Below are positions 31,774 through 54,400 of a stretch of 64,000 nt of DNA, piece after piece (the first letter of the stretch is position 1; each line of letters opens with the position of its first letter). A model generated the notes under the pieces. The model did no database searches. It was not told the origin of the DNA and was given only the letters and a program-made list of their open reading frames with translations. The position numbers and the translations under genes were made by a program. Origin of the DNA: Cyanophora paradoxa CCMP329 (taxonomy: Eukaryota; Plantae; Glaucophyta); the NCBI GenBank assembly GCA_004431415.1, contig QPMI01000535.1, positions 124,001 through 188,000 of the forward strand, read 5' to 3'.

Positions 31774-32131
31774 CTACGGACTCGTACTGAGTCGTACCGT
31801 ACCGTATCGCGTACTACGACGCGTAGTACCGACCGTATCGCCGTCCGCGCCGACGGTCGATTCGCCACGCAGAATGCCACGCACGCGCAGATCCGATCCG
31901 GATTCCGGATCTGGATCCGGATTCTGGACATGTACAATCGCGATCTCGGACGATGAGTCACGCGTCGCGATCTCGCGGCCCCCGGGGGCTACAGTGCCGC
32001 TACACTGTGACAGGCCTAGGCCTACTGGTACCGGGGTAGGCTACAGCCTACTAGGCTAGAGCAGCCTAGCACTGGCTAGCAGGCCTACAGGCTACAGCAG
32101 GCCTTCAAAAAAACACATTTCTCGCGTTCAT

Positions 32132-35100
32132 CTACCAGCTGCAGGCCGCGCGATCGCGCGCGCCCCCCGGCCGCGGGGCGCCGGCGGGGCCGGGGGCGCC
32201 GGCGAGGGCGTCGAGGGCGGCGCGGGAGGCGGCGAGGGCGGCCCCGCCGCTTCCCACCGCTTCCTCGCGAAGAAGGCGGGGCAGTCGAGCGAGTCGCAGG
32301 GGACGGCCGCCGGGTCCGCCTCCCCGCTCGGGCCCCGCCGCACGCCCCGCACGCCGCCGCGAGGCGCGCCCCCTCCGCCTCGCGCTCCCGCAGCCGCGAG
32401 AGGAGGATGTACGCGGCCGCCGCCGGCTGCGCGGCGCACTCGGCGCACAGGCCTGATCCCGAGCCCGTGCTGGCGCTGGAGCCGGGGCGGGTCGCAGCCG
32501 GGCCCGGGGCCGGGGCGAGGGCGTCGCAGACGGGGCAGTGGCGGGAGAGGTAGTAGTGCTCGAGGGTGGACGAGCTCGCCGCCCCGGGCAGGCCCGGCGC
32601 CAGCAGCGAGCCGGCGGAGCCGGAGGAGGAGGAGGAGGAGGCGTGGGGGAGGATGGGGCGCGCCGCCGCCCGCGCCGGCTTCGGCATCGCGTGGTACCTG
32701 TACCCCGGGGGGCCGGCCCCGGCTCAGATCCCGGGGGGTACACGGGACGGAGAGCAGGGGGGTACCAGGCCTCGAGGTCGGCGCCGACGAGCTGGAAGAC
32801 GCGCTGGAGGGGGGGAATGATCTGTCGGCCCGTCAGCACCCAGCCCGCCCCGGACCCACCCCGGGCACGCCCGCCCCGGACCCGCCCGCCCCACGGGGGC
32901 GCACGGCCTTGGTGATGTAGTAGGCGGCGTTGATGCGGGCGCCGCCCCCGGCCCCGCCCCCGGCCAGGGACGACCTGCAAGCAGGTTCCGATAAGAGGGG
33001 CGAGGGGGGCGCCGGGGCGGGGGCAAACGGGCCCGCCGGAGCCGAGTTGGGCGCGCAGGAACTCGTGCGGCGACATCACCTGCCGGCGCCCGCGCGTCAA
33101 GCGAGCTCAGGCTTCTGGAGCGAAGGCTCGGGGCGGGGCGGGGCGCGCGTGGTCGACGAGGCGGAAGTGGGCGGCGGGGCCGGCGACCACCACGTACGGC
33201 ACCCGCTCCCCGTACCTGCCAGAGATGTCAAATCCGATCCAGGGGCCCGGCTGGAGCCGACGGGGCGGAGCGGAGCGGGGCGGGGGGGCGGGGGGCACCG
33301 GGGCTCGGCGCGGGGGTCCCCCTTGACGGAGCGGACGGTGACGGCGGCCGCCGGCGGCAGCTGGCCCCGCCCGCTGCTGCGCGTCAGAGAGAGTGGAGAG
33401 AGAGAGAGGGGGAGAGAGGGAGACAGAGAGACAGAGAGAGAGGGAGAGGAAGAGAAGGGGGGCACCTGTAGGTGCCGAGGCGGACCTCGCGCGCGAAGAT
33501 CAGATCCTGCGCCGCGATCAGCTCAAATAAGGGGCGGGGCGGGGCGGGACGGGGCGGGCGGGGCGGGGGCGGGCCTGGAGGGAGACGCGGCCCGTCATGA
33601 TCTTCGTCCACTGCTTGCACAGGTACCGCTGCCCGCCCCGCCCCGTCAGCAGGCCAGACCCTGTAGAATCCCAAGGGAGGGAGGGAGGGGAGGGGAGGAG
33701 GGGGCGGCTGCCTAGGGGAGCGCGCCAGGAGCCTAGACTCTAGACTCCCAAGGGAGGGAGGGAGGGACGGGGGGAGGGAGGGGCGGCGCGCCTTGACGCG
33801 GGAGAGGTCGGGGTCGGAGAAGAGCAGCCGGATCGCCTTCTCCATGATCCGCTGCGAGGCGGGTCGGGCCGGGACGGGTCGGGACGAGACGGCGGGCGAG
33901 GAGAACGAAAAGAAAGAAAGGGGTGCGCGTGCGCGCGCGCGCACCTGCGTCGCACCGCACTGGTCCCGCCGGATCGCCTCGATGCCCTGCGAGCGGAGGT
34001 GAGTGGGGGCGATGATGAGGATGAGGAGGAGACGGAGTGCCTTGGCGTCGAAGACGGGTACGGCCTGGCCGGGGGCCTCGAAGGCGTGCCCCACGTAGCG
34101 CTTCTTCGTGATCAGCACGCACGGGTGGAACACCTTCTCCATCTGCGAGAGCGAAAGAAGAGCGAGGTCAGAGTTGGGCGACCCGGAGGGAGAGTTCGCG
34201 CCTTGGGGCTCGGGTCCGGGCGCCCGGGATCCAAATCTAGGGAATAGCCCAGTTGGATCTAAGAGGGCCGCCTCCGGATCCGAGGCCGTCCCGACGCAGA
34301 GGAGGGGGTGGGGGGAAGGGGGGGGGGGGGGTGATGGGTGGGGGAAGGGGGGGGGGTGGTGGTGGGCGAGGCGGCTCCACATTTAGACCCCGGGCGGCAT
34401 CCCCCGGGCCCTTGGGCTCGAAAGTGGGGCGGGCCTGGAGCTTGACGGGGCGGGGGTTCGCGGCGGTGACGGCGGCGGCGATCTCGGCCCCCACCCGGAA
34501 GGCCTCCTCCCGGCTCGCCCCCGGCACCAGCACGAACATGCTGCGGCGGCCCCGACGCTCAGACGGGCGGGCGCGGGCGCTGAGCGGAGATCTAGAGCCG
34601 CGGCGGGCGGGCGCGCCTGTCGGTGTCGCCGTAGACAACGCGGGCGTTCCAGCGGCCGGACTCCACCAGCGCGATCGCTCGCGTCAGCGTGTCCCGCCCC
34701 GCCTGCGCGGCCACGACATCGATGCGTGAGACCAGGGTCTGGACCTTGAATCCGACGATCTCATCGATCTAGCAGCGAGTTTATCCCGCCTGCAGATCGG
34801 GTCTAAGACGGGCGGCGCGGCAGGCCTCGACGATGGCGTCGGCGATCTCGGCGCAGGGCATGCGCCCCGAGAAGCCCGCCGCCGTGTACCTGGCCAGAAC
34901 GAGGCTTCAGACGGACGGGGCGGGGTGGAGGGTAGAGGAGGAGCGCGGGGCCGCCCGTACCCGTAGGTGACGTTGGCGATCATCTTCAGCCCGAACTGCC
35001 TGCTCGAGCGCCCCCGACTCTCAGCAGGGGTGAGGAGGGAGAGGGAAGGGAGAGGGGCGGGGCGGGGCGGGGCGGGCCGGGCGTTGAGCATGCGGTGGAG

Positions 35101-38100
35101 GACGGGGTCCCCCCTCGCCTCCTTCATCGCCCGCTTCACCTGAGGGGGAGGGGCTCAGGAGGAGGGAGGGAGGGAGGGGGGGGAGGGGGCGGGCGGGCCA
35201 TGACGCGGGTGTCGAGGATCTCGCGGAGCATGCGCGGCAGCACCCCGGCCCGCACTGCCCGGAGGCCGGTCAGAGGAGATGGCGCGGGGTGGGCGCGGAG
35301 GGAGGGCGCGGGGCCACCCTCGGGCTTGACGAAGAGGGTGCCGTTGGGCGAGGCGTAGATCGCCTCCTCCAGCTCCCCCAGCGCCCCTAAGGAAGATAAG
35401 CAGGCGGGGAGAAGGCGGAGGCGGAGGCGGGGGTGGAGTTGGTGGGGGCGGACCCTTCGGGGGGCAGTAGCGGGGGTCGACCCCGAGGCGCCGGGGGCGC
35501 CCCGCCGCCGGCCCGCCCAGCTGCGGTTGCGAGGGCGCGTGAGGCCCGAAGAGGAGGAAGGGCGGGGAGGGGCGGGGAGGGGCGGGGAGGGGCGGGGAGG
35601 GGCGGGGCGGGCCTTGCCGAGGCAGGTGGAGAAGCAGAGGTTGTACGCGATCACCATCGAGGGGTACAGCGACTGCCCGGGGCGTGTAAGAAGGTAGAGG
35701 GGAGGAAGGGGGGGGGGGGGGGGGAGGAGGGGGCGGGGGCGCCTGGAAGTCGAAGACGATGACGGGGGAAGTGTAGAAGCGGCTCTCCGGCTCCATCACC
35801 TGAGGGGGGAAGAAAGAGAGACTAAGACGAGAAGGGGGGCGACGCGGAGGAAGAGGGGAGAGGGGAGAGGGGACCATGGGGATGCACTCGACGGCCGGCT
35901 GCGCCTCCACCTGCCCGCCCCGCCCGGCGTCACGCGAGGCAGGCGCCTGGGAGCGCGCGGGAGAGAGAAAGGGACGCCTGGCTCGCCTGGGCCTTGCTCG
36001 GGGAGAGGAGGAGGTAGTTCTGGGGCTTGGCGAGCCGCAGCATCATCGACTCCACCCGGTACTGCCCGCCCCGGTGAGAGGTGGGAGGCGGCGGGGCCAG
36101 CCGCGGGCGAGGGGCGGCGGTGCGAGAGAGGACCCGGGGCCCGCGGGCAGCGCGACTCTCCCCTAGCTCAGCTAGCTCCCTAGCTCCCTCGGACGGCGGG
36201 ACTCTCTCCTAGCTTCCCAGCTCGCCGTGGGGACCCCTTCCCGTCGGACCTGGGAGCCGCGGGCGAGGACGGCGAAGAAGTCGATGCCGAAGGTGCGCGC
36301 CAGCTCCGACGTCCGCCGCACCTGCCCGCCGCGTCGCGCGGGGCCGGGAGGAGGGGGGCGGGGGGAGAGGGGCCAGCAACAGCCAGCCGCGTCGTGCGGC
36401 CAGCGAGTCTCGTTTCAAGCGGACATCTTCGCCGCGCCTCGCAGCCAGCCAGCAGCTCTAGCCTCGGGCGGGGCGGGGCGGGGCGGGGCGGGGCGGGGGC
36501 GGACGAGGTCGACGGCCTCGAGGATGGCGAGCGTCGCCCGCGCCCGCTGCCTGCGCGCCCGTGGCGTGAGGGCGCGAAGGAGGCCGAGGGACGGCCGCTT
36601 GAGGGACGGGGCCGGCGCACGCGTAGTAGCGGGCGACGCGCCAGCGGGGCGGGGCCGGCCTCCCCGCCGCGGGGTCCGGGGGCGCCCCCGGCGCGCCCCG
36701 CCACCACCGCGTCAGCACCGAGAAGGGGTAGTGCGGCAGCCGCGTCTGGGGGGGGCCCTCAGGCGGCGAGGAAGGGGGGGGAGGGGGCGAGAAGGGGGTG
36801 CCTTGAGGAGGTGCCAGGCGACGTTCTCGAGGGAGTACATGTTCAGCTTGAGCTCCCCCCGCATCAGCCGCCACACGTTCAGCACGTGCCTGCCGGAGAT
36901 CAGGCCAGGGAGAAGGGGAATGGATAGGGGCGGACCGGCCGGAGATGTGGACGCCCGTCGCGTGGTCGACGCCGTACGCGTCCTCGCGGCGCTCGAGGGG
37001 CGTCGTCAGCCCCGGCGACCGCGAGAGCTCCCTACCCGCAGCGAGGGGAGGGTTGTTAGGCTAAGAGGAGAGGGCCAATAGGGTCGGAGGCGCAGAGCAT
37101 GCACCGCTGGAGGTCGATGCCGAGGGCCGGGGCGCGCTCGAGGAGGTACCCCAGCGAGCCGCCCTGCACCTCGTACCCCGCCAGCACGTCCGGGTCCATC
37201 CCCCGCACCAGCTCCACGAACCCTGGGGGTACGCCGTTTAGACGACAGACTAAAAGGAAAGCGAAAGGGGTACCCCGGAAGAGGGCGGGCTCGTCGGGGA
37301 AGGAGCGGGCGTCGGAGAAGGGCTCGCCGGGGTACTCCAATTTCCAGGCGGCCCGGGCTCCCGGCCCCGTCGGTGGGGGCGGGGCGGGCGGGCGGGGCGG
37401 GGGCGGGGGCATGGGGTCCGAGGGGGCGGCGGGGGCGGGAGCAGAGGCGTCCGAAGCCGACGGGGCAGGGGCCGGCGGCTGAGCCGGCGGGGGCGGGGGC
37501 TCGGGGGGCTCCGGGGGCGGGGTGCAGGGCTCGACCAGGAGGATGCCGAGGCGGGGCCGGTACTGCCCCGGCCCGTGCCCCGCCCGGTCCTGCAGCTCCT
37601 CCTTCAGAAAGGAAACGCAAAGAAGGAGGAAAGCAAGGGAAGGGGAGGAGGATACGCGCCTGTTCGGCGTCGTCGTGGACGGCGTACACGATTGCCGCCA
37701 CCGCGTCCGCCCGGGGGTCGGGCCTGATGGGGGTACACGATCAGCGAAGGGGGAAGGGGAGGAGGGGCGGCCGGCGGCGCACCGAAGCTCGCCGCGCGTG
37801 TTGGCGTGCACCTCGATGCTGCCGGAGAGGTCACAGAAGGCGAAGAAGGGGCGAAGCGAAGGGGAAAGGAGGCTTGCCTCAGGAGGGTGAGGAACTGGCC
37901 GACGTGGTGCGGCTTCGGCGGCTCTCGCGGGGCCCCCGCCCCGCCCTCCGACGGCCCTGTACCCCCCGAGGACCCCTCCGACCGGGCCGCGCCCGAGCCG
38001 CCGGCCGAAGCGGCGGCGGCGGCGCCGCCCGCCGAGGAGCGCGCAGGCGACTCGGCGGTGGGGCGGGAGGCCGGGGCGCCGCCGCCGCCGCCCCCGCCGA

Positions 38101-41100
38101 AGAAGTACCCCCGGTTGATGGAGCCGCGGTACCCCTCCGAGTACTTGGGCGAGGGCGGCCGCTCCCGCTCCGGCGTCTCCGGGTCGACGCCCCCGGCGCC
38201 GCCCTCCGCCCGGGCCCGCTTCGGCGGCGTGCCCCTGCGCTCTAGTGGTTAGTTCAGGGCGGACGTCGCGGGAGGGAGGGTAGGAGGGGGCGCGGCTCTA
38301 GATCTCTCGCACCTCGCCTCCTCCTCCTCCTGCCCTCCTTTTTGGTTCGCCGCCGCCTCGCCCGCCGCCGCCGCTTGGAGCGGTCTTGGAGCGGTCTTGG
38401 AGCGCTTGGAGGCGGTGGAGGCGGCGGCGGCGACGCGCTTGGACAGCAGCGAGAGGCGCGCGCTGCGGCGGCCGGCGCGGGGCCCCGTCAGCAGCGAGAG
38501 CTGCGGAGCGAGGAAAGGTTCAGCTGGGACGAGCAGGTCTCATAGACGGGGCGGGGCGGGGCGGGGGCGCGGGCCTGGGTGCCGCCGTCGGCGAAGGGGG
38601 CCGGGTCGTTGGCGCCGGTGCCCCGGCCCCCGCCAGCACCAGCCGCCCGTACGAGTCCACGCGCTCCGCCTGCACCGGTAACCGTTTCTTAGGACGGTCC
38701 ACGTTTTCTTAGGGCGCAAGGGGGTACGGGCTTTGACGGCGCTGCGCTGGGAGGCGGCGAGGAGCCCCTCGGCCTCGCGCTCGAGCCACGCCCGCGCCTC
38801 CCGCCCCGTCGGCGGCGCCCTCCGCGCCGGCGTCAGCGCGTACACCCGCGTCCTGCACCCGGTTCAGAGAAGCGGGGCGGGGAGGGTGGGGCGGGGCGGA
38901 GCGGAGCGGGCGCCTAAAAGGCCGCTAAGGGCGCTAGAAGAGTGCGGGGCGAGGCGGGGCGGGGCGGGCGCCTGGGGGGGGCGTCTCGCCGAGGGCCAGG
39001 AGCCCGCGCCAGTGGGCGAGGCCGCGGGGCCCCGGCAGCGGCGGCAGGCCCCTCCGCTCCCGCGCCCTCGCCACCGTCAACCGCGTGTCGAACCTGAGCG
39101 AGGGGGGTGAGGTGTTGGGGGGTGGAGGGTGGAGGGGGGAAGGAAAGGGGGTAGGGCACTCGGGGAGGGCGGGGGTCTCGGTGGAGGGTACGCGGAAGTC
39201 GCGCCCTGCGAAGTGGCGCGGGCGCGCCGGCACGTCCCGCCGGTCCCCGTAGTATGGCTCCTGCGTCGTCCGAGCCAGAAGGGTCAGATGAGCCCCAGCA
39301 GTAGTTCAGGCGAGCCCGACGCGCCTCGTGGGCGATGTGGGGCAGGCCGTAGGAGCGGAAGGTCGCGGGGAGGTCGGCGCGGGAGGGCGGGTCGACGGCC
39401 GGCCGCAGCGCGAAGAGGGGCGTCGAGGGGGCGCGCTGGGGCGCCGGCCGCGGGGCCGGAGCCGGAGGCTCAACCACGGCAAGCGAGGGGGACGGGGTGG
39501 AGGGGGAGGGGGAGGAGCCGGCGCCCTCGGCGGGGGCGGGGGGCGGGGAGGGCGGCAGCGGGGGTGGAGGCGCGGGCTGAACGGGAGGGGGAGGGGGAAG
39601 GGCCGGTCCGCGGATGAAGCGGGGAGGGGGAGTGCTGGGCCACGGGCCCGGCGGGGTGGAGTCGGGGGAGAGGGGGTGAGCTGCGGCCGGGGGGGTAGAC
39701 GGATCCTTGGCCCGGGGCGTCGAAGTAGGAGGTACAGGGGCGGGGCGGGAGCGGGGGGCGGCGGCGGCGTCTCCGGGATTTCGATGGGGTCGGGTGGACC
39801 GGGGTGGGAGGGGCCGGTCGACGGGGTCCTGGGTACAGGGGCGGAAGCGGAGGGAGGGGGGGCGGAGTCTCCGGGATCTCGATGGACGCGGGGGGCGCCG
39901 GTGCGGAGTGCGCCGGGCGCGGGGGGCTGGCCGGAGAGGCCACGTCGATGACCTCGTAAGGGGCCGGGCGGGGCGGCGGCGTGCCGGGAAGGTGGGCGGG
40001 GCGGGGCGGGGCGGAGGCCCGGGCCGGAGAGGGGGGTACCGGGGAGATCCCCGCCTCCTCGAGGGCGGCGGCGAGGGTCCGGAAGGGCCGCTGCGGCGTG
40101 CCGAGGGGCGTACCCCCAGCCGCCCGCGGCGCCCCCGGCGAGCCCCGGGGCGGCGCGGGGGGCCCCGCCTCGGCCTCTGCTTCGGCCATCTCCGCGTCCT
40201 CCTCCGCCTCGGGCAAAGGAGGGAAGGCGTCGCCGGGGCGGCCGGCGGACGCGTCGGCGGGCCCCGCGGCCCCCGCGCGCGAAGCCGCCGCCGGCGTCCT
40301 CCTCCTCCTCCTCAAGCTCTTCCCTTGCGCCCTGGACGGCCGCCCGAGGGCGGGCGGGGGCCCCGGGCCGCCTTCGGGCGGATTCCGACCGCCCAGGCCC
40401 CCCCTCCTCCCCCCCCTCCCCCTCGGGCTCCTCGACCTCGTCCCCCGCCCCCTGCGGAGCCTCAGCGGCGCAGCGGCGCAGGCGCGGGCGGGCCGCCGTT
40501 GATCGATCGCTCGCGCACCCCCTCCGCCTCCTCCCCGTCCTCCCCGCCCCCCGCCTCCTCCTCCCCGTGTTGGACCTCCTCCGCCGCCTCCTGCGGGGCG
40601 CCCTGCGGCTCGTCTCCTCCCTCCGAGCCGCGCGAGGCGGGGCGGGGCTGGAAACGCACCGCGGGGCCCGCCTCCACTTCCTCGTCCTCTTCCTCCTCGT
40701 CGACGATTACCTCCACGTGGCCGTCCCCGCCCCCCTCCTCGCCCTCCTCCACATCGTCGCCGCCGCCGGCCTCCTCCGCCTCCGCGGGCGGGCGCCGCGG
40801 CCGCCGCGGCGAGGCCGAGGCGGCGGAGGCGGCGGCGGCCTCCGGCGCCGGGCGGAGGTCCAGGGCGTAGCGGGGGACGGGGAGAGCCCTGCGCCGCCGG
40901 CCTCAGGCGGGTCGAGGGTCGAGGGGCGAGGGGCGAGGGAGGGGGGCGGACCCTTGGAGGGCGTCCGCCGCGCGCGGGGCGTCCTGCGCGCCCGAGCGGC
41001 GGCCGCGGCGCCTCCTCCTCCCGCTCCTCTTTTTCCGCCGCCTCCGCCTCCGCCTCCGCCTCCTCCATCTCGACCTCCTCGTACCCCTCCCCAGCGTCCT

Positions 41101-42762
41101 CGGGGAGCCGCTGTCCCCGCCCCTCTGCCGCCCCCGCTGCCGCCCCCGGACCCGCGCCAGGAGCCGGCCCCGCCGTAGCTTCCGCCGCCTCCGCCGCCGC
41201 CGCTCCGGCGCGCGCGCGAGCCCCGCGCCGAGCCGCCGCTGCTGCTGCCGCCGCCGCTGCCTCCGGGGCTGCCCCTGTCCCGCCTCTCAAGCACCAGGTC
41301 CTGCGCGGCTTGTTAGCGCACGGAAAGCTTTATGGACCTCCGACTTCGTTCGCTCGCACCTCGTCCTCGTCGCTGAGGAGGTCGCCCTGCCCCTCCTCGT
41401 CCTCCTCGTTCTCCTCCTCCGCGTCCTCGGCCGCCCTGCGCGCCTCCGCCGCCGCCGCCGCCTCGAAGCCCTGCGGGGCCCCATTCTAAGAGGCGGGGAG
41501 AAGGGGGGGAAGAGAGGGCGGCGCACGCGGAACTTGGGGACGTAGAAGTGGGGCCCGGCGCGCTCCTCGGCCGGCCCGAGCGGCTCGAACGCGCCCTCCA
41601 CCGCGTCGAAGAAGTGGCGCACGTAGAACGTGTCTGCCGCCCCCGCCGCCCCGGTGCTCTCAGGGAGGGAGGAAGAGGGAAGGGCGCGCTGCGATAGGAG
41701 ACGCCGCGGCGCACCGGCGTCGAGCCGCGGTGTCGGAGCGGCCGCGAGGCCGGGGCCGCCCCGCCTGCCGCCGCCGCCCATCCGATCAGATTGGTCAGAT
41801 CACATCAGATCCGATCCGAACGCAGCGGACCGGAGGGCGGCGTAGGGGAGGACGCGGCAGCGGCGCTCGACGGAGGCGACCGGGTTCTTGTCCGTGTGGT
41901 CCGACGCGAAGAGCTCCCTGCACGGGCGAGGGCGCGTGAGGCGCGGGCCGGGCTCGGCCGAGAAGGTTTCTACCGGTGGCATCTCTAGCTACGGCCACAG
42001 AGGGCGAGGGGCGGGGCCCGTCTCTCGCGAGGGGCGGGGCCCGTCTCTATCTACCGGCGGCGGGACATTTCTAGCTGGCAGCGGGCGGGCGGGCGGGCGG
42101 GCGGGCGGGCGGGCGGGCGCACTGGTCGCCGTGGAGGCCGGGGACGCGCCCCAGCGACGTGTCCTCCGGCCGGTAGAACCACCGCACCTGCGCACGCACC
42201 AGGGGGTACGGGCTCAGACGGGGGGGAGGAGGGGGGGAGGGGGAAGGGGGGGCGCCTCCATCCAGTCTTCAGGCCAGTCCTCGTCCTCCTCCTCCTCCTG
42301 GCCTCGGCCGCCGAGCAGCCCGGGGCCGAAGTCCCGCCAGAGGCGCACCACGCGCGCCACCGGCGGCGGCGGCCGCGCCGGCGCCGGCCCCGACTCCGAG
42401 CCCTGCATGGGCTCATCAAGGGAAGGAGGGTGGGGGTGGATACAAAAGACAGAACAGACGCGCGCCTCCTCGCTGCCCCCCGCGTCCTCCTCCTCCCCCT
42501 CGAGGCGCGTGAGTAGGACGCAGTCCCCGGGGCGGATCCAGGCCCCGCTCGGGATGCGCGCCCGCGCGAGGCGGCGCCGCCCACCGCCCACACCGGCCCC
42601 GCCGCCGCCTCCTCCGCCGCGCAGGCGGCTGCGGCGGGGGCGGCGGGGCGGGCCGGTGCCGGCTCGTCCTCCTCGGCGGCGTCGGAGGGCGGCGGGGCCG
42701 GCGGCGGGGCGCGGGGGAGCGCCCGTGGGAGCCGCGCCCGTGGGAGCCGCGGCCGGGGCCGG

Positions 42763-42801
<39 letters not shown>

Positions 42802-45800
42802 GGGCGGCGCGGCGGGCGAGGGCGGCCTGCTCCTCGCGGACGCGGGCGGGCGAGGGCGGCTCGGGGACTGAGGGCGGCACCGAGCTGCCCGAGGAGGAGG
42901 CGGGGGAGACGGGGGAGGGCGGGCGGCGGCGCGGAGGGGAGGCGGCCCCCGCCGGGCTCACAGCCTGTGGCCGGCCGAGGCTCGGGGGCCTGCTCCAGAC
43001 GAGGACGGGCGAGGACGGGGAGAGCGGCGTGGGGGGCACGATCTCCCCCGAGCGCCCCGCCTCGGACCCGGCCTCCGCCTCCTCGAAGGCCGCCGGGGCG
43101 CCTCGGCGCTCCGCCTCCGGGCGGCGCGGCGGGCTTCCCGGATCCTCGAAGAGGCATCCGAGGCTGGCGGCCGGGCCGGCCCGGCCCCCGCTTCCGCCCC
43201 CGCCCCCGCCGCCCTCCTCCGCCTCGCCGCCCTCCGCTTCCCGGGCGCGCGTGCGGCTGCGGGCGCGCGGGGCCGGCGCAGGCCACTCCGGCTCCTCGCC
43301 GGCCGCCGCCGCCGCCGCCGACGACGCCGCTCCCGCCCGCCGCCGCCGCCGCCGCCGCTGTAGTTGATGCGGTCCAACTCGGCCTGCTGCCGCGCCCTCC
43401 GCCGCCACTGCCGCCGGAGCGTGAGGGAGGGCGGGGATGGGGCGGGGCGGGACGGGGTGGGGTAGGACCTGCTGGTAGCGGGGGTCGGCCTTGGACTTGA
43501 AGCGGGGCACGGCGGGCGGGGCGGGCGGGGCCCGCGGGGCGACGAGCGGCGCCAGGTTCGAGATGGCTGGGGAGGGCGGGAAGGCGGGGGCGGCCGTGCG
43601 GGGCGCGCGGGGCGCGGCGCCGCCGGCACGAAGGCCGCCGCCGGGGCACGCGGGCGGGGGCGGCAGGCAGCGGGGCGGACGCATGGGACGAGGCCGGAGC
43701 CGGCGCGGGCGGGCGGGAGGAGGAGGAGGATGCGGCGGCGGGGCGGGGGCGGGGGCGGGGCCGGCGGAGGCGGAGCGGGGGCGGAAGGGGAGGCCCCAGG
43801 CGGCGCCGGCGGGGCGGGCGGAGGGGGCGCTGGTGCGGGGCGCGGGGCCGGCGCCGGCGTCGGGACCGCGTCCTCGTCCGACGAGCCGGCGGCCGCCGCG
43901 CGCCCGCGCCCTGAAGGCGGTCAGGCCGCAGGAGGAGGAGGAGGAGGGGGGGGGCGTGGGCGGGGACGGGGCGCACGTGGGACCCCGGGGCCCGCGCTGA
44001 CGACGGCGATGGGGAGTGCGCAGTAGCGCTTGCGCCCGGCCGGCGCCGGCGCCGGCGCCGGCGCCGCGGGCGCCCCCGCAGAAGCGTCGCGCCCCGCTTG
44101 CGGGCGGGGCGGGGTCCCTTGGCCCCGGCCCTCCGCTCCTTGCGCCCATCGCCCCCCGCCCCCGCCCCTCCTCCTCGTCCTCCTCGTCCCCGGCCCCGTC
44201 GTACTGCGGGATGCGCCTCGCCGCCTCCGGAGGCGGCCCCTCCCCTCGCGCCGTCTCCCTGCGCCAGATCAGAGAGCGTCCCCGGCCGGACTCGAGCCGG
44301 CGCACCGCATCTCGTCCGCCTCGCGCTGCGAGAAGATCGCCCCGTCGACGGCGCCCGCCGCCGGCTCCTGCTCTCCGGCTTCCTGGGGGAAAGGTCAAGG
44401 TGAAAGGGGTGGGGGGAGGGACAGGGGGTACGGGCTCGCCTCGCCGTCCTCTAGCTCTCGGTCGTACCCCTCGTCCCACCGCACGTCCGGCGGGGCCTCC
44501 TGCGCCCGGATCAGCGACCCTGTACCCCCCGCCCCAGGGGCCGCGGCGCGCGGGCCGCGCGCCTCGCCGCCGGCGCCGGCGCCGTCCCCGCCGCCCCGCA
44601 TCCAGTCCAGGATGCCGCCAAGCTCCTCCTCCTCGGCCTGCTGGGGGGTACGTCAGGGTACAAAGGGGCGCGGGCGGGGCACGGCACCTGCGAGGCCCGG
44701 GCGAGGGCCGCCTCGTCGACAAACGGGCCGCCGCCGCCGCCGCCTTGGGGCGGACCCTCGCTGCTGCGCCGCGCCGCCGTCTGCTGCGAGAGCGCCGCCG
44801 CCGCCGCCGCCGCCGCCGCCCACCACTCGTCCTCGTCCTGGGGCGAAGTGAGCGAAGCGGGGGATGGGGTGGAGGCGGCGGCGCGGGGGTACCGGGTCGG
44901 TCGGCGCCGGCTCGGGCGGGGCGGGGCGGGCGGGGCGGGCGGGGCGGGGCGGGGCGAGGCGGCGCGGTCTGCTGCGGAGGGCCAGGCTCGGCTGCCCCCG
45001 CCGGGCCCGGTCGCCCCGTCCTCCCCGTGGAAGTCCGCCTCGTTGGAGGGGGCACGGCCTCGGGCGCGAAGGCCCCGGCGCGGGGGCGGCGGGGCCCGGG
45101 GCGGTGACCTGCGCGGCGGGAGGGGGCGAGTGGTCAAGCGCGGGGCGGCGTGCACGCGCCTCCGGGGCCGAGGAAAGGCGCACGGGTCGGGCGAGGGCGG
45201 CGCCGGCGGCGGCTGCGGGCCCCGGGCGGCGTCGAGGCGGCGGCGGCGGCTGCCTCCAGGAACGGGTTGCTCCACACGAACCTGCCCCGAGAGGGGGGTA
45301 TGAGAAGAAGCCCGGGGAATGGCGGGGGAGGGGGGGGGAGGCGCGCGGCGGGTGTACCCCGCGTCTGGATCCTCCGGCTCCTCTTCCTCTCCCTCCCCGG
45401 CCGGCGCCGGCCGTTTCCGCTGCAGGGCGGGCGGCGGCGGTGGCGGTGGGGGCGGCGGCGGCGGGGCAGGCGGCTCTAGGCCCCCGGGGGCCCGTTCTCG
45501 GCGCGTCGGTCCTGCCGGCGCGGGTCGAGGACGGATCAAGAGAACAAGTGGCCCTGTGGCGATTCGAACCTGCGACGCGACCTCGTGCAGGCGGGCGCGG
45601 AGCGCGCGGGCGGCGGCCGTGGGCGGCGCCGGCGCCCGCGGCTGCGACTCAGGCGCCTCGGGCTGCGAGGCCAGTCCCGCCTGTCCCGCCGGGTCAGCGG
45701 TAAGGGAGACGAGGGGTACGCTGTTCTGCAAGGCGCGCCTGGCGCCGGCGCTCGCGGTCCTCGTCCCACATCGCCGCGAGGCTCTGCACCAGCTTCGTCT

Positions 45801-47255
45801 CCCGCGCCTCCCGCGCCTGGGGGTACCCCGTTCGGGGAGGGGGTACGGGGCGGGGAGGGGAGTGCTGCACGCGTACCCGGAGGGAGGAGGGGTTCGAGAG
45901 GCGCGGGTTTCCGATGGCCGCGGTGGGTAGATCCGATCGGTTCATGACGTCTGGGAGGGGGGGGTACCCGGTCGGAGGGGCATACCCCGGGGGGCAGAGC
46001 AGGGGGTACCGCACCCTCGACGGAGGCATCGAGCTCGAGCTCGCAGAGGGATACGCGTTTCGCGCCGGCCCAGGAGGGCCAAATGGCCGAAGGGGGGGTA
46101 CGAGATGCCGTCCACACGCGCGTGCAGGCGGCCGCCCCGCGCTGGGCCCCTACCACGCGCTGCGTGTACCCCGTCGCCTCTCCCTGCGAGTCTGTGGGGG
46201 TACGAGCGGTAAGGGACCGCAAAGAGGGGTACGGGGATCGGGCGCGCCGCCGTCGGGCTCGGGGGGCGGGTCGTAGCCGATGGGGGTCCAGCGCTCACGC
46301 GGCCGCTCGGGCAGCGGGGTACGGAAACGAAAAGACGATAGATTCAACAGCGCCATGCCGTACCTGCAGAGAGGGTTACTGAAGGTGAGCGGGGGCGGGG
46401 AGCTCGGGGGGGGGGGTACGCGCAGGTTGAGGTCGACGAAGAGCTGGAGGAGGAAGGGAATGTGGGCCTCGTGGGGCTGGAAAGCGCGCCCCAGCACGGC
46501 GCCGCTCTGCAGCAGCGCCGCCGCGCGGCTCACAAGGCCCGGGTTGTATCTGGTTGTACCCCCCGTCGGGCCCGGGCCAGGGGCCGCCGGCGGGGGGCGG
46601 CAGGGGGCGCACAGGTATATCTTGACGAAGAGGCGCTCGGAGGGGTAGTATCCGTAGAACGGCTTCCCCCGCACGAGCGCCACTTTGAAGATGTGTGCGC
46701 GGGAGCGGCGCCCCGCCTGCGGCGCCGCCTCCGCGCCGGCCCCGCCCGCCGCGTCGGCCGCCGCCCGCGCGGCCCCGCCGGCGATCGCCGCGATGTTGGC
46801 GCCGCGGGAGAGTTCCATTGCGCGCTCGATGCCCGCCGCGAGCGCCGTAAGGAACGTGGAGACTGCGGCGTGGAAGGGGACTGTTCGCTTCGAATTCGAG
46901 GCCGCACGCGCTCGCGGGCGGCCGCACCTTGCACGGCGTCGGTTCCAAGGTCCTCCGGGTACGGAACAAAGAAGTACGGGAAGGCCTACGCCCCGGAGGC
47001 CCGAGAATGAGCGCGGGACCTTGAGGCGCGTGCGGCGGGCAGGGGAGCGCCGCGGCACACCCTGTGGAGGTGCAAGCAGGCCTTCTGGCCCGCCGGCGTC
47101 GACCCGAACACGCGCACGACGGGCACCTCCCGCACGACGGCGCCAGTTAGCGGGCTTCGCATCGGGTCCGCGCGAGCGATCGGCGGCGCCATGTAGAAGT
47201 CCGCATTCACGATGCGGATGCTGAACGCCGCCCGCGGCGGGCTCTCCGCCGACAT
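32132..47255 (-). CDS. REV3: DNA polymerase zeta catalytic subunit, multi-exon, with an internal BAH domain
   Basis: N-terminus MSAE..FSIRIVNADFYMAPP..VPVVRVFGSTPAGQKACLHLH, FQPHEAHIPFLLQLFVDLNL, LVQSLAAMWDEDRERR, IPQYDG. Exo-like DPDVLAGYEVQGGSLGYLLERA. Pol motifs VFDFQSLYPSMVIAYNLCFST, RQFGLKMIANVTYGY, VVYGDTDSMFV, ITKKRYVG. C-terminal CPVC..CAEC and CGAC..CDSLDC metal-binding motifs. Ends ..ACSW* if one frameshift near 32250 is allowed. Confidence 0.95.
41580..42560 (-). other. BAH (bromo-adjacent homology) domain-coding exons inside REV3
   Basis: Successive exons read WIRPGDCVLL, VARVVRLWRD, VRWFYRPEDT, ELFASDHTDKNPVASVERRCRV and DTFYVRHFFDAVEGAFEPL, which is the canonical BAH motif order. 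Confidence 0.85.
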
Positions 47256-47304: not shown

Positions 47305-48562
47305 ATGCCGAGCGCGGCGGCGAACCCGACAGCGAAATACGATCCCACAGCCGGTAAGCAGCGCGCTGGGGCCGACGTAACGGCCTACCGCAGTGCGCGC
47401 CTGACCGAGCCGCAGATCTCGAACGAGCCATTACAATCTCGAAAGTCGAGGCTGTCAAGTGAGCGATCTAGCGAGCCTCCTGCAACGCCGTAGGGCCGCG
47501 CGCGAGCGGCCGCCCCGCGGCAAAGTTCGCGCCGAGGTATCCCACGGTGCCAACGCGCCCCGCAGGAAAGCACTGCAGCATGGAGCGAACCTTCAGTTCC
47601 AGCCCGCGCCCGGCGTCAGCCTGCTGATGCGCGCCTGCGAGACCAAGCACACTGAGATCGTCCGGTGCGCGTGGGCGACGGGGCTTAGCTATTCGCGCCC
47701 TGAGGCGCGCCGCAGCATGCTGCTGGAGGCTGGCGCAGAGCTCGATGTGGTCTCGAACGAGGGCTACACCGCCCTGCTGGTCGCCGCCGCCGCCGGTTCG
47801 GGCGCGCGCGCGGGCGGGCGCGGGCGGCGCTGAGCGCAGCGGGCGCGCGGCAGGGAACGTGGAGACGGCGCAGTGCCTGCTGAACGCGGGGGCGAACGTG
47901 CTTCTCGGCTCGCCCGAGCGCTGGTACGACGCCATCGACGCCCTGCTCTCCTCCAGCAAGGCCGAGCAGCGCGAGCTCGCGAGGCGCGTACCCCCCATGC
48001 TTCCGCTCCATCTGGCATCCCCGCACGGGCCGATGGGGCTGGTCGCGCAGGCAAATCATGAGCCGCGGCTGCGGCCTCAGCGCCGAGACTGCGCGGCGGG
48101 ACGGCCTCTCTCTCCTCGATTGGGCCGTCCGCGAGAACAACGGGGTACGCATACACCGTCTTGCCCGCATGCATTCCGTACCCCCCTTAGAGTTGCGTAC
48201 CTCCAGGCCCGGATCGCCCTCATCCATGAGTGCACGGAGGCGCGGCGGCGGGCCGACTTCTCGCGTGACGTCACCGCCGTCGTCCAGCCCGTGCGCGCAG
48301 TACCCCCCTCCCGACGCCCGTACCCCTCCTCACCCCCTTCGCAGATACTGGAGCTTCTCGACGCCCGCGTCATCGAGCTGTTCCGCCGCGTCGAGGTACC
48401 CCCCCCCCCTCCACTCCCCGCGACGCCTCTCCCCATCCGAGCCCGTACCCCCCCCTCCCCCCCCCCTCGGCGCAGGCGCTGGGCGAGCGGCTGTCGAGGG
48501 TGGAGGAGCGCGTGGGGCACGCGCGGCCGCAGGCGCAGCCCCAGCCGCAGCAGTTCCACTAG
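47305..48562 (+). CDS. Small multi-exon ankyrin-repeat protein with a C-terminal coiled-coil-like segment
   Basis: Spliced reading MPSAAANPTAKYDPTA|DLERAITISKVEAVK|KALQHGANLQFQPAPGVSLLMRAC..MLLEAGAELDVVSNEGYTALLVAAAA|GNVETAQCLLNAGANV..LGERLSRVEERV..QQFH*. Stop TAG at 48560-48562. Confidence 0.8.
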
Positions 48563-49816
48563 CCCGCCCCGCCCCGCCCCGCCCCGCCCCGCGTCCGCGT
48601 CGGAGGCGCCTCGCACGCCGCCGAATCGTGAATTATAATTATGTATTCCGAGCTCCGCCTGAAAAGGAGAGCCGGGTGGCACTGCACTGCACGCGTACGG
48701 CCGCGCTGGCGGCGCGCGGCGGCCCGGCGGGCCGGGGTCCCGTCACCCCGTCCTGGACCCCTAGCCCCACGTGCACATCTAAATCTTGACCATGAACGAG
48801 ATCGAGAAGAGAGGCGGGGATCCCGAGGCCGCTGAGCTCCCTCCCCGAGGCCGAGGGCGAGGCCGCCGCGTCCGACCGTCGGACGGGCGTCCGCGACCGA
48901 GCTCGAGCCACGTACTGAGTCATCGTACTTCGAGAGCGGGCCAGTAATCCAGTACTAGTAATCCAGTAATCCAGTCAAAAGGCTTCAAGATTTGTAAAAA
49001 CGCGAGGAGGCGCCTTCCGCTCCGGATCCGAGGCTCCCTGCCCGGGGCAGGAGCTCGAGGTGCCCCTGCACGGAGTACATGCCCGGACAGGACCTCGAGG
49101 CGCCCACGCGGAGGGCGCGCAGGGACCGGAACCATGCGCCGCCAGCCTGGCGGGACGCCGCGGGAGACCAAAAATGTTCAAAGCTTTAATACTAGGGGCC
49201 CGGCCGCGTTTGGCGCGCCGGGGGTGCAAGGGGGGAACCGGGATCTAATGAAAGAGTCGTAGTGGCACGGGCATGCACGGGGCAGATGTAGATCGACCCC
49301 GGCCCGGCCCAGCTGCAGTAATAATCCATGCATGCCTGCCGGCGCCGGCGCCAGTGCCGCAGCTGAGACTGCTGCCAGCTGCAGGCTGGGAGATCGCGCC
49401 CCACGTGCACAGGCCGGCCCCCACTATATTGCAAGGGGGGGTACCCCCTCCCTTGCTCCCCTGGTGAATTGGTGCGGCGTACTTTCTGTGTTAGCAATTT
49501 TTGTAAGATGAGATTCTTTGCATGCACTCTCGTATAGGTGTGATCGCACCATAGCCGCTGCGAGCGGCGGAAAAAAATGCAATGGCGGGGCTGCGCAAAC
49601 ATGCCGAAGCCGCTCCTCACCTGCTATTGCTATATGCGCCAAACCACGTGCTCCTGATTGCTCTAAATGCGCTCTACAAACTCTGTCATACATGCCTTGG
49701 CTCGAGAAGCGGCGCGTCGCGCGCTAGGCCGCCTCAAGTACCTGTTGTACCGGGCGCCGAAAAAAAGCGCTCCCGAGAGTTTCAGGAGATCGTGTTACAG
49801 TACCCGTGCTTCAAGC

Positions 49817-50850: not shown

Positions 50851-51412
50851 CCTTCGCCTGCCTGCCTGCCCGGTCCCGCCGCCCGCGACGCCACCCCACC
50901 TGCCCGCCTCGCCCGGCAGCCAGCCTTGCCTCTCTGCCCCTCCCCCCCTCCCCCCCCTTCCGCCCCCCCCCCTCCCACCCTAAGTACCCTGCAATGTGTA
51001 CCAGTACCCCCCCTTGCACCTCCGCGCGTGGCCCGCACTTGCCACTCTTGCACGGGGCCGGGCGCGGTCTGCTAGTATGCTAACGCAGTGCCCCTAGGCC
51101 TAGCTCGTCCTTACATAAGTGCTTACAATAAAGTAAAAAAAGTAGACGACACGTACTCAGTATACTATGATAGCTAGGCCTAGCGACATCTTAATTAAAA
51201 AAAAAAAGACGACATGCGCACTTTGACCATGGCGTCAGCTGTTCTGTCATGAAGATCTGGTGTTTTCCGCGATGATCGAAATGATAAAAGAAAGCTGCCG
51301 CAACGCTGCATCGAATGCTATAGCTATCTATCGTCTTAAGATTATGCAATCACTTTAACTCACGATCGCGATCCTGCACGAATCGATTGCAACTGCAAGC
51401 TACAACTGAGCT

Positions 51413-54400
51413 TCAGTGGAATGGGACGTGGTGGTCGGCCCAGGACACGCCGCCGTCCGCGTGCAGCGCCCCTGCGCCGTGGGCGGCGTCCTCCTCCGCG
51501 TCGGCGGCGGCCGCCAGCGCCAGCGCCTCCGCCGCGGCGTGCAGCCCGCCGAACGGGTCGTCGGTCGCCTCTGCCGCCTCCGCCGCCTGCGGCCCACGGC
51601 TTCAATCGCGCGCTCCGCATTCAGAGCTGCATCGAGCCAGAGCGCACCTCGGCGACGAAAGAGTAGGGCCGCATCCCGGCGTCGACGTCGACGACGTTCG
51701 CCTCCACATCCAGGTGGTTGCTCGCCGGCTGCCCGCCATCGCCGACCTGCTCGTCCGCCCCGCCGCCGCCGCTGCCGCCGTTGTCGCCGCCGTTGTCGCC
51801 GCCGTTTCCATTGTTGCCGCCATTGTCGCCGCCGCCGCTGCCGTCCTGGGCCTGGCCGTCGGACCCCGAAGCCTCCGCGCCTGCTTGCTGCTGGTCTTGG
51901 GAACCGTCAGCTGCAGCCTGCTGGTCGGCGCCGCCCGAATCGCCGCCTGCCTGCGCCGACCCGTCCGCGCCAGGCCCGTCGGGCCCTTGGCCTTCTGCCG
52001 CGTCCGCTGGAGGTTGCTCCGGCTGCGCCGCCCGTCAGCGCAAGCTGCCAGCGACCGGCGGCATGCAGCACAAGCGGTCGCACCGGAGGCTGCTCGCCGT
52101 TGGACCCCCCCTGGCCGCCCGCGCCCTGCTCGCCGCCCTGCACCCCCAATGAGCCGACCCGCTTCGAAAAGCACACACTCACGGCCCCGCTCGGATGGCA
52201 CGCTAAAGCGAGCGGGAACGCACCTCCGGAGGCGCCTCGCCGTCCACCGCGCCGCGGACCGTGTCCTGCACGCCGTCCACCGCCTCCTGCGCGGCGCCCT
52301 TCGCCTCTTCCACCGCCTCCTTGGCGCCGTCGACCGTCTCCTGAACCGCCGCCTTGGCGCCGTCCACCGTCTCGCTGACCGCATCCTTGACGCCGTCGAC
52401 CGTCTCCTGGACCGCCGCCTTGGCGCCGTCCACCGTCTCGCTTACTGTCTCCTTGACGCCGTCGACCGTCTCTTGAACCGTGTCCTTGACGCCGTCCACC
52501 ACGTCGCTGACCGCCTCCTTGGCGCCGTCCACCGTGTCGCGAACCGTGCTCTTGACGTCCTCGAAGGTGCTCTTCGCCTCGTCGATGGTGCCCGTCACGG
52601 TGTCCTGCGAAACCCGCTCACGATCGAGACGCCGGCTGCAGCCCGCCGGCCGAGCGACGCGCGACGCCGTCCGACGCACCTTGACGTCCTGGATCGTGTC
52701 CTTCACGTTGTCCACCGTGTCCTTGACCGTGTCAACGGCCTGCGAAAGAGGTCATGATCGGCTGCGCGACGGCGACGCGGACACTCTGACGAGGCGCGCG
52801 CGCACGTCTTTCACGGTCTGCACGGCCTTGAGCCCCTTGGAGAGGCCCTTGCCGAGCTTCTTCGTCCAGGGCTTCTTGGCTGCGGCCGTGTCATCCAGAG
52901 TAGCGCCGGCTGGGGCGTGTCGGGCCGGGAGGCGGCGCACCCTTCGGGGCCTTCTTGACTGCCTTCTTCCCCGGCTTCTTGGCAGGCTTCTTCGCCGGCT
53001 TCTTGGCAGGCTTCTTCTTGGCAGACTTCTTGACGGGCTTCTTCTTGGCAGCTGTGAAGGCGACGGCATCAGACGCAGTGCAGCGAGATTCGACGCAGCA
53101 ATCGATGGAGCACCCTTCTTCACGGGCTTCTTCTTCACGGGCTTCTTCACGGGCTTCTTCCGCATGGGCTTCTTCTTCGCCATGGGCTTCTTCTTTTTGA
53201 TAGTCTTGCGCGACGAGCGGCCCCGCTTCTGCATCGACTGTGCGGCCGTCAGCGCGTGATGTCGGCGAGCGCTGGCGCGTGAACGGGCGCACCGAGCTCC
53301 TGCGGAAGAACCGCGTGTAGTGCCTGAGCTGTACCTGCCCGTCGCCATCGAGCTCGAGTCCGGAGATCGATGCCTGCGGAGCCAAGGCGCTGAAAGGGTC
53401 GATCCCCAAACCGGCCGCGTCCTCAATCTCCTCCGCCGCCTGCGGCCCACGGCTTCAATCGCGCGCTCCGCATTCAGAGCTGCATCGAGCCAGAGCGCAC
53501 CTCGGCGACGAAAGAGTAGGGCCGCATCCCGACGTCGACGTCGACGACGTTCGCCTCCACATCCAGGTGGTTGCTCGCCGGCTGCCCGCCATCGCCGCTC
53601 TGCTCGTCCGCCCCGCCGCCGCCGCTGCCGCCGTTGTCGCCGCCGTTGTCGCCGCCGTTTCCATTGTTGCCGCCATTGTCGCCGCCGCCGCTGCCGTCCT
53701 GGGCCTGGCCGTCGGACCCCGAAGCCTCCGCGCCTGCTTGCTGCTGGTCTAGGGAACCGTCAGCTGCAGCCTGCTGGTCGGCGCCACCCGAATCGCCGCC
53801 CGCCTGCGCCGACCCGTCCGCGCCAGGCCCGTCGGGCCCTTGGCCTTCTGCCGCGTCCGCTGGAGGTTGCTCCGGCTGCGCCGCCCGTCAGCGCAAGCTG
53901 CCAGCGACCGGCGGCATGCAGCACAAGCGGTCGCACCGGAGGCTGCTCGCCGTTGGACCCCCCCTGGCCGCCCGCGCCCTGCTCGCCGCCCTGCACCCCC
54001 AATGAGCCGACCCGCTTCGAAAAGCACACACCAGTGACCCCGCTCGGATGGCACGCTAAAGCGAGCGGGAATGCACCTCCGGAGGCGCCTCGCCGTCCAC
54101 CGCGCCGCGGACCGTGTCCTGCACGCCGTCCACCGCCTCCTGCGCGGCGCCCTTCGCCTCTTCCACCGCCTCCTTGGCGCCGTCGACCGTCTCCTGAACC
54201 GCCGCCTTGGCGCCGTCCACCGTCTCGCTGACCGCATCCTTGACGCCGTCGACCGTCTCCTGGACCGCCGCCTTGGCGCCGTCCACCGTCTCGCTTACTG
54301 TCTCCTTGACGCCGTCGACCGTCTCTTGAACCGTGTCCTTGACGCCGTCCACCACGTCGCTGACCGCCTCCTTGGCGCCGTCCACCGTGTCGCGAACCGT

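What the first reader, a model, noticed from the sequence alone, without database searches (positions are those of the whole stretch)
41580..42560. DNA polymerase zeta (REV3) with an embedded BAH chromatin-reader domain
Seen: a complete BAH motif series on the same strand as REV3, between the REV3 N-terminal landmarks (IPQYDG at ~44200) and the conserved PP..YGLP..PYY..DVP..G.DF segment (~39190-39390) that precedes the exo/pol domains. Known: BAH domains read nucleosomes or methyl-lysine (ORC1, DNMT1, Sir3, EBS/SHL); I know of no REV3 described with one. Inference: a mutagenic translesion polymerase that may be targeted directly to a chromatin state such as heterochromatin, repeats or origins, a possible route to chromatin-directed repair or mutagenesis.
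Basis: partly seen in the sequence, partly recalled or inferred. Interest (0 to 1): 0.85.

Follow-up and report, generated by a model that had tools for sequence, protein, structure and literature searches.

The report
Polymerase zeta carrying a BAH domain
In the alga Cyanophora paradoxa, and in an unrelated unidentified protist, the error-prone DNA repair polymerase zeta carries a built-in domain of a type that usually binds silenced chromatin, which suggests the enzyme can dock on chromatin by itself; no binding or transcript has been shown yet.

Summary
The window is Cyanophora paradoxa. A five-exon BAH domain (41527-42579, minus strand) lies inside the single, collinear REV3 gene (47255 to about 32128), between the IPQYDG and EPYY landmarks. 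Its exons score as coding, its introns are GC/GT-AG and in phase, and its only hits are methyl-lysine-reader BAHs. No RNA covers the gene; the public model breaks mid-BAH at a GC donor, and the assembly has frameshifts. Independent support: a metagenome contig of an unrelated, intron-poor eukaryote (L019) has BAH, exonuclease, polymerase and zinc finger in one stop-free frame, with the BAH in the same slot and under purifying selection between two haplotypes. BAH was absent from about 190 other REV3 proteins and 55 of 56 informative loci; several protist groups were not sampled. I found no paper on the fusion and no earlier scan note on it. Vertebrate REV3L carries its HP1-binding motif in the same insert, so chromatin docking is the likeliest role. 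Caveat: the Cyanophora domain lacks one cage tyrosine that SHL needs, so canonical H3K27me3 reading is doubtful there. Verdict: new variant of a known kind; fusion about 0.88, docking role about 0.6.

The parts
32128..47255 (-). REV3 (DNA polymerase zeta catalytic subunit) gene, many short introns; 3' end approximate
   Evidence: Pfam REV3_N, exo1, pol_B and zf-C4pol on separate pieces; collinear REV3 profile hits; tblastn of homologues
46300..47255 (-). REV3_N and POL3_N N-terminal domains
44195..44212 (-). IPQYDG landmark, upstream boundary of the insert that holds the BAH
   Evidence: profile columns 509-526
42580..42583 (-). probable one-base assembly deletion in a G run just upstream of the BAH (coding frame switches with no room for an intron)
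   Evidence: frame switch in the codon model; the short-read contig of run X1 matches up to 42582 and leaves its last 2 letters unaligned; inference
42466..42579 (-). BAH exon part 1 (IRPGDCVLL strand, then acidic loop)
   Evidence: coding score 0.19 bits/nt; collinear with L019 BAH 8-16 but not significant alone
42256..42402 (-). BAH exon 2 (VARVVRLW strand; first cage position is Pro, not Tyr)
   Evidence: PY.. motif of BAHCC1, EBS and SHL seen
42123..42187 (-). BAH exon 3 (VRWFYRPEDT; cage Trp and second Tyr kept)
41831..41917 (-). BAH exon 4 (ELFASDHTD; His and Asp equivalent to SHL H88 and D90 kept)
   Evidence: Pfam BAH E=5.4e-4
41527..41764 (-). BAH exon 5 (DTFYVRHFFD); its first part may hold a further intron (about 41715-41657) or be skipped by an acceptor at 41657
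   Evidence: coding score 0.39 bits/nt for 41655-41527, negative for 41715-41656
41360..41470 (-). acidic exon spliced in frame behind the BAH
   Evidence: GT-AG phase 0 intron 41526-41471; coding score 0.51; most of the DNA 41267-42064 confirmed by X1 contig 4
39198..39435 (-). conserved PP..YGLP / EPYY..D.P segment, downstream boundary of the insert
   Evidence: profile columns 806-844; DNA 39163-39401 confirmed by X1 contig 1
36626..37820 (-). family B exonuclease-like domain exons
32768..36321 (-). family B polymerase domain exons, with DFQSLYPS, K..N..YG and YGDTDS motifs present
32251..32603 (-). C4 zinc-finger region, with a frameshift in a G run at about 32315-32322 (probable assembly error)

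Best explanation
One gene encodes a pol zeta catalytic subunit whose variable insert, between the IPQ.DG and PYY/PFY motifs, holds a folded BAH domain of the EBS/SHL/BAHCC1 class on long Pro/Ala/Glu-rich linkers. Shown: the domain, its position, and in L019 a single reading frame with the polymerase. Inferred: the same continuity in Cyanophora. Inferred: the BAH works as a tether that holds pol zeta on nucleosomes of silenced, repeat-rich chromatin, so that extension past lesions and hard-to-copy DNA happens there. This is the job that the HP1-binding PxVxL motif does from the same insert in vertebrate REV3L. In L019 the methyl-lysine cage is complete. In Cyanophora it is partial, so binding there may be weaker, less mark-specific or aimed at another chromatin protein.
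For: Collinear single REV3 locus around the BAH. BAH exons score 0.19-0.39 bits/nt as coding against a median of 0.29 for conserved exons, and their introns score negative. A stop-free, frameshift-free exon chain from IPQYDG to EPYY exists, the best path includes the BAH, and skipping it costs 84-108 bits and needs a 1099-nt intron against 40-292 nt elsewhere in the gene. No intergenic-like dip: lowest 100-nt GC upstream of the BAH is 0.76, against 0.58-0.61 outside the gene. L019 has BAH (E=8.6e-11, 42.2 bits, above the cut-off of 30.8), exo1, pol_B and zf-C4 in one frame. A second haplotype, L082, shows 13 synonymous and 1 non-synonymous codon differences in the BAH. The L019 BAH's best PDB hits are EBS and SHL. 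Vertebrate PSVVL lies between the same two landmarks (PMC8561639). C. paradoxa methylates and silences repeats (PMC12344493).
Against: No RNA evidence for the Cyanophora gene. The public model stops mid-BAH. The linkers are low-complexity with probable frameshifts, so the exon chain is a permissive test. Cage Tyr is Pro in Cyanophora and the His is Tyr in L019; single changes at these sites abolish SHL binding (PMC6013494). H3K27me3 and PRC2 were not established in C. paradoxa (PMC5405695, older assembly). No usable structure model was obtained.
Confidence: 0.6

Rival explanations
1. The BAH is in the REV3 protein but in Cyanophora it no longer reads a histone mark. It is a protein-protein or RNA-binding adaptor, or a tolerated passenger in a permissive insert.
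For: First cage Tyr replaced by Pro (PMC6013494). Large low-complexity loops inside the domain. Most REV3 proteins work without it. Unchecked scan notes describe other BAH fusions in this genome, one without a cage.
Against: Trp, second Tyr, His and Asp are all kept. All strands are present, stop-free and in frame across four introns. The L019 domain has a full cage and is under purifying selection.
Confidence: 0.27
2. The BAH exons are not part of the REV3 mRNA in Cyanophora: they form a nested gene, a skipped cassette, or the locus is split into two genes.
For: No transcript data. The EukProt model g17514 ends inside the BAH. Frame switches flank the domain.
Against: All 17 junctions of that model use GT donors, while many introns of the conserved half use GC donors; the model stops by reading into a GC-donor intron. 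No in-frame ATG and no GC dip upstream of the BAH. A frameshift also interrupts the conserved zinc finger, which points to assembly error. The same architecture is one frame in L019 and L082.
Confidence: 0.1
3. The BAH was dropped into the gene recently by a BAH-carrying transposon.
For: Unchecked scan notes report a BAH-like passenger in RAG1-like transposons of this genome.
Against: No terminal repeats or target duplication around the domain. Four phase-compatible introns. Codon use like the rest of the gene. Same slot occupied in a distant eukaryote. Two of those notes could not confirm the passenger BAH.
Confidence: 0.03

Closest known systems
REV3 / REV3L (DNA polymerase zeta catalytic subunit)
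   Same: REV3_N, POL3_N, exonuclease-like, pol_B and zf-C4pol in order; catalytic motifs present; polymerase tree puts Cyanophora next to Viridiplantae, as expected for vertical descent.
   Different: A BAH domain in the insert, not seen in about 190 other REV3 proteins checked.
Vertebrate REV3L with PxVxL motif bound by HP1 (PMC8561639)
   Same: A heterochromatin-related module in the same insert, between IPQ.DG and the PFY/PYY motif.
   Different: The vertebrate motif is a short peptide that needs an HP1 dimer and is confined to vertebrates; here a whole reader-type domain is part of the polymerase, and no binding is shown.
H3K27me3-reading BAH domains EBS, SHL, AIPP3, BAHCC1, and the TNRC18 BAH
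   Same: The only sequence hits in the PDB for exons 3 and 4; Trp, second Tyr, His and Asp kept in Cyanophora; Tyr, Trp, Tyr and Asp kept in L019.
   Different: Cyanophora lacks the first cage Tyr; L019 has Tyr for the His; neither has the adjacent PHD finger of EBS/SHL; both are fused to a DNA polymerase.
BAH-bearing replication proteins ORC1 and DNMT1/CMT (own knowledge; PMC6013494, PMC12344493)
   Same: A BAH that links a DNA-acting protein to chromatin.
   Different: No sequence hit to these BAH classes; they are an initiator and a methyltransferase, not a polymerase.

Membership tests
REV3 (pol zeta catalytic subunit) | REV3_N and POL3_N N-terminal domains | tested here: met
   E=5.3e-17 and 1.3e-17, both above cut-off
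REV3 (pol zeta catalytic subunit) | exonuclease-like, pol_B and C4 zinc-finger domains in order, with catalytic motifs | tested here: met
   one probable assembly frameshift in the zinc finger
REV3 (pol zeta catalytic subunit) | REV7-binding motifs and assembly with REV7, POL31 and POL32 | not tested
   not examined
BAH domain (PF01426) | whole-domain score above the Pfam cut-off (30.8 bits), Cyanophora | tested here: inconclusive
   single exons give 20.3 and 11.1 bits; the joined model was not searched, by the operators' rule
BAH domain (PF01426) | whole-domain score above the Pfam cut-off, L019 REV3 | tested here: met
   42.2 bits, E=8.6e-11
BAH domain (PF01426) | all motif blocks present in order | tested here: met
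   five exons collinear on the L019 BAH
BAH domain (PF01426) | BAH beta-barrel fold | tested here: inconclusive
   single-sequence model of the L019 BAH had pLDDT 48 and gave no meaningful fold match
H3K27me3-reader BAH (EBS/SHL/BAHCC1) | aromatic cage Tyr-Trp-Tyr (SHL Y41, W63, Y65), Cyanophora | tested here: not met
   Pro, Trp, Tyr (PMC6013494)
H3K27me3-reader BAH (EBS/SHL/BAHCC1) | His and Asp that read H3 S28/P30 (SHL H88, D90), Cyanophora | tested here: met
   H-T-D in exon 4
H3K27me3-reader BAH (EBS/SHL/BAHCC1) | aromatic cage, L019 | tested here: met
   Tyr, Trp, Tyr aligned to EBS and SHL
H3K27me3-reader BAH (EBS/SHL/BAHCC1) | His and Asp pair, L019 | tested here: not met
   Tyr in place of His, Asp kept
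H3K27me3-reader BAH (EBS/SHL/BAHCC1) | measured binding to H3K27me3 | not testable with these tools
   needs peptide or nucleosome binding assays
REV3-BAH fusion protein | one transcript in Cyanophora | tested here: inconclusive
   no RNA run holds the gene; sequence evidence favours one gene
REV3-BAH fusion protein | one reading frame in another organism | tested here: met
   L019:2529-6623 and L082:6628-8997

The most novel reading that the evidence does not exclude
An early eukaryotic pol zeta, at least in the ancestor of Archaeplastida and the L019 lineage, carried its own methyl-lysine-reading BAH and was steered directly to silenced chromatin. The module was lost in green plants and is absent in Amorphea, and vertebrates later re-evolved the same targeting through HP1. 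The two extant copies each lack a different one of the five SHL determinants, so a shared ancestor would have had all five. This would be a mutagenic polymerase that reads a repressive histone mark itself.
Probability: 0.25. Interest if true: 0.85.

Novelty: new variant of a known kind. Interest (0 to 1): 0.64.

Why it matters
Why silenced, late-replicating, repeat-rich DNA mutates faster, and how translesion polymerases are sent there, is an open question. The one worked-out route is indirect (REV3L to HP1) and confined to vertebrates. A pol zeta with a reader-type domain of its own would give a direct link from chromatin state to error-prone synthesis. It can be tested with one small domain in vitro and, with a BAH-less allele, in vivo. 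Finding the fusion in two distant protists shows either an old lost feature or repeated recruitment to the same insert. The result also shows that GT-only gene prediction hides such architectures in Cyanophora.

Tried and rejected
RNA: the one run that holds the region (X1, 2012) behaves as DNA, since a contig runs through introns unspliced; three RNA-guess runs gave only short low-complexity matches. ESM Atlas: nothing for the half BAH; only polymerase clusters without BAH for the L019 protein. Word search with the exon 4 frame found no candidates. Viral contigs gave only viral B-family polymerases or nothing; prokaryotic genomes nothing. Contigs of four protist N-terminal fragments were too short or had no BAH; P0001, P0130 and P0331 had no contig on record. 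AlphaFold of the L019 BAH alone was low-confidence and its fold search meaningless. Exons 1 and 5 had no useful PDB hit. The bacterial promoter scan does not apply to a eukaryote and is not used. The zf-RanBP in Solanum REV3 models lies behind the polymerase domain, not in the insert, so it is not a parallel case. The tree neither joins Cyanophora and L019 nor rejects joining them (p-AU 0.128), so one origin against two stays open. The EBS paper was not held.

Full report
Source and gene. The window is GC-rich, intron-rich eukaryotic DNA. A search with an N-terminal stretch returned one 100% identical protein, P0001, which is EukProt EP00741 Cyanophora paradoxa tig00021038_g17514.t1. Pfam finds REV3_N at the 5' end, and exo1, pol_B and zf-C4pol pieces further down the minus strand. 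A profile built from 60 full-length REV3 proteins, laid on 45-residue tiles of the window, gives one monotonic series of hits from 47213 to 32251. There is one REV3 locus, and the region in question lies between profile columns 526 (IPQYDG) and 806 (EPYY).

The BAH. Five exons carry the motif series: 42579-42466, 42402-42256, 42187-42123, 41917-41831 and 41764-41527, with intron phases 0, 0, 2, 2 and a phase 0 GT-AG intron to the next, acidic exon. Searched exon by exon, exon 4 hits Pfam BAH at E=5.4e-4 and exon 3 at E=0.39, in profile order. The only PDB hits of exon 3 are BAHCC1, TNRC18, SHL and EBS, and those of exon 4 are 7cce (the AIPP3 BAH, per PMC13068663) and TNRC18. These PDB hits are weak singly, but all are BAH domains of the methyl-lysine-reader class. 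Exons 1, 2 and 5 are not significant alone, yet all five fall on a full BAH in collinear order.

Is it one protein in Cyanophora? There is no transcript evidence. The only run that holds the region behaves as DNA, and the RNA-guess runs laid here have no contig on the gene. The public model joins the REV3 N-terminus to the first half of the BAH and then stops. That break looks like an annotation artefact: all 17 junctions of the model use GT donors, many introns of the conserved half use GC donors, and the model ends by reading into the GC-donor intron at 42255. The authors used BRAKER/Augustus on a PacBio assembly and warn that the models need curation (PMC6704402). A codon model trained on the conserved exons and introns of this gene separates the two classes in leave-one-out tests and scores the BAH exons as coding in the predicted frames and their introns as non-coding. 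A path search from IPQYDG to EPYY finds a stop-free chain even with no frameshift allowed, includes the BAH, and loses 84-108 bits and needs a 1099-nt intron if the BAH is forbidden; other introns of the gene are 40-292 nt. This test is permissive because the linkers are low-complexity. There is no in-frame ATG close upstream of the BAH and no drop in GC such as flanks the gene, which argues against a nested or split gene. With frameshifts allowed the path prefers three, one of them just upstream of the BAH. A clear frameshift also interrupts the conserved zinc finger near 32315, and the short-read contig over 42415-42582 leaves its last two letters unaligned where one extra G would restore the frame. 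I read these as assembly errors; this is inference.

An independent case. A scan of metagenome contigs with a REV3 alignment gave 80 loci. One, L019 (JAESGV010001489.1), has a BAH in the REV3 frame. The stop-free frame L019:2529-6623 holds BAH (E=8.6e-11, above cut-off), exo1, pol_B and zf-C4pol. The BAH follows ISQLDG, the counterpart of IPQYDG, and precedes the PYY motif: the same slot as in Cyanophora. A second contig from the same sample, L082, is 98% identical in protein, keeps BAH and exonuclease in one frame, and differs by 13 synonymous and 1 non-synonymous codon within the BAH, so a chimeric assembly is unlikely and the domain is under purifying selection. The sample is a metagenome of a Tildeniella torsiva culture (PMC8354539). 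The contig is from an unidentified eukaryote with 39% GC and introns of about 31 and 36 nt; a heterolobosean amoeba is my guess only. Among 26,236 translated pieces and proteins in hand, the best non-self hits of its BAH are Cyanophora exons 4 and 3. In a polymerase-domain tree L019 falls outside Amorphea plus Diphylleia and outside Viridiplantae, on a long branch next to Cyanophora but not sister to it; a joint clade is not rejected (p-AU 0.128). For this tree each Cyanophora exon was placed on the profile on its own. One origin against two is unresolved.

How common? No BAH was found in the inserts of 44 REV3 proteins scanned with Pfam, nor in the precomputed domains of 28 and 120 further hits (the sets overlap slightly). 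Of 56 metagenome loci that reach the N-terminal domain, only L019 has one. The sample covers animals, fungi, plants, green algae, amoebozoans, Diphylleia, Thecamonas and Ichthyophonus. I identified no SAR, haptophyte, cryptist, red algal, discoban or other glaucophyte sequence in it, so the fusion may be wider than seen. Full-text searches found no paper that mentions it, and the held supplements of a eukaryote-wide chromatin survey do not list it (one file was cut when stored). The L019 protein is in public collections with both domains called by Pfam, but is named only as a family B polymerase.

Mechanism. SHL binds H3K27me3 through Y41, W63, Y65, H88 and D90, and each single mutation abolishes binding (PMC6013494). 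Cyanophora keeps four of the five and has Pro at the first Tyr. L019 keeps the full cage and the Asp and has Tyr at the His. Neither passes the full test, so I do not file either as an H3K27me3 reader; they work like one at best. Vertebrate REV3L is recruited to pericentromeric heterochromatin by a PxVxL motif bound by HP1 (PMC8561639), and in the vertebrate proteins in hand that motif lies between the same two landmarks. C. paradoxa has heavy CpG methylation on repeats and silent genes (PMC12344493); H3K27me3 and PRC2 were inconclusive on the older assembly (PMC5405695). The likeliest reading is a tether that holds pol zeta on silenced chromatin. Shown: domain, position, fusion in L019, selection in L019. 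Inferred: fusion in Cyanophora (about 0.88), chromatin docking (about 0.6 overall), methyl-lysine reading by the Cyanophora domain (about 0.3).

Left out. Earlier scan notes gave the organism lead and mention other BAH fusions in this genome; I verified the organism, not those fusions. None reports this REV3 fusion.

Verdict. A real and apparently undescribed domain variant of pol zeta, present in two distant eukaryotes, with a plausible but untested chromatin-docking role. New variant of a known kind; interest 0.64.

Noticed in passing
L019:2529-6626 and L082:6628-8997: REV3 with BAH in one reading frame in an unidentified AT-rich, intron-poor eukaryote from a cyanobacterial culture metagenome; the cleanest test case for the fusion (protein P0326).
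   Followed up: yes
window 33150-37800: Many introns of this gene have GC donors, which the public GT-only gene models miss; other Cyanophora genes are probably split or truncated in the same way.
   Followed up: partly
window 32315-32322, about 41133, 42580-42583, about 43327: Probable one-base deletions in G/C runs of the long-read assembly inside the REV3 coding sequence.
   Followed up: partly
window 41918-42122: The longest BAH intron (205 nt) holds a 23-nt tandem duplication and several short TAG/CTAG palindromic motifs; similar motifs occur in other introns of the gene.
   Followed up: no
L007:5213-11986: A chlorophyte-like REV3 has a faint PHD-like zinc-finger hit (PF13832, E=0.028, residues 932-978) in its insert; if real, a second type of chromatin-reader module in the same region.
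   Followed up: no
   Followed up: partly
window 51400-57100: Three near-identical tandem copies of a unit of about 1853 nt with an LEA-like 11-residue repeat exon and a Lys-rich, histone H1-like tail.
   Followed up: no
window 57354-59327: A 657-aa intronless Ala/Lys-rich repeat protein with 96-residue and 9-residue repeats and no clear family.
   Followed up: no
window 11900-18500: Large Cys-rich repeat gene (GCC2/ephrin-receptor-like repeats by eye) with near-identical internal duplications of about 1077 nt.
   Followed up: no
window 47459-48640: An ankyrin-repeat-like gene starts about 200 nt from the REV3 start codon on the opposite strand, so the promoter is probably shared.
   Followed up: no
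L019:7841-9058: Neighbour of the L019 REV3 with C2H2, GRF zinc ribbon, HARP and 3CxxC domains and no helicase; possibly a DNA-repair accessory protein.
   Followed up: no
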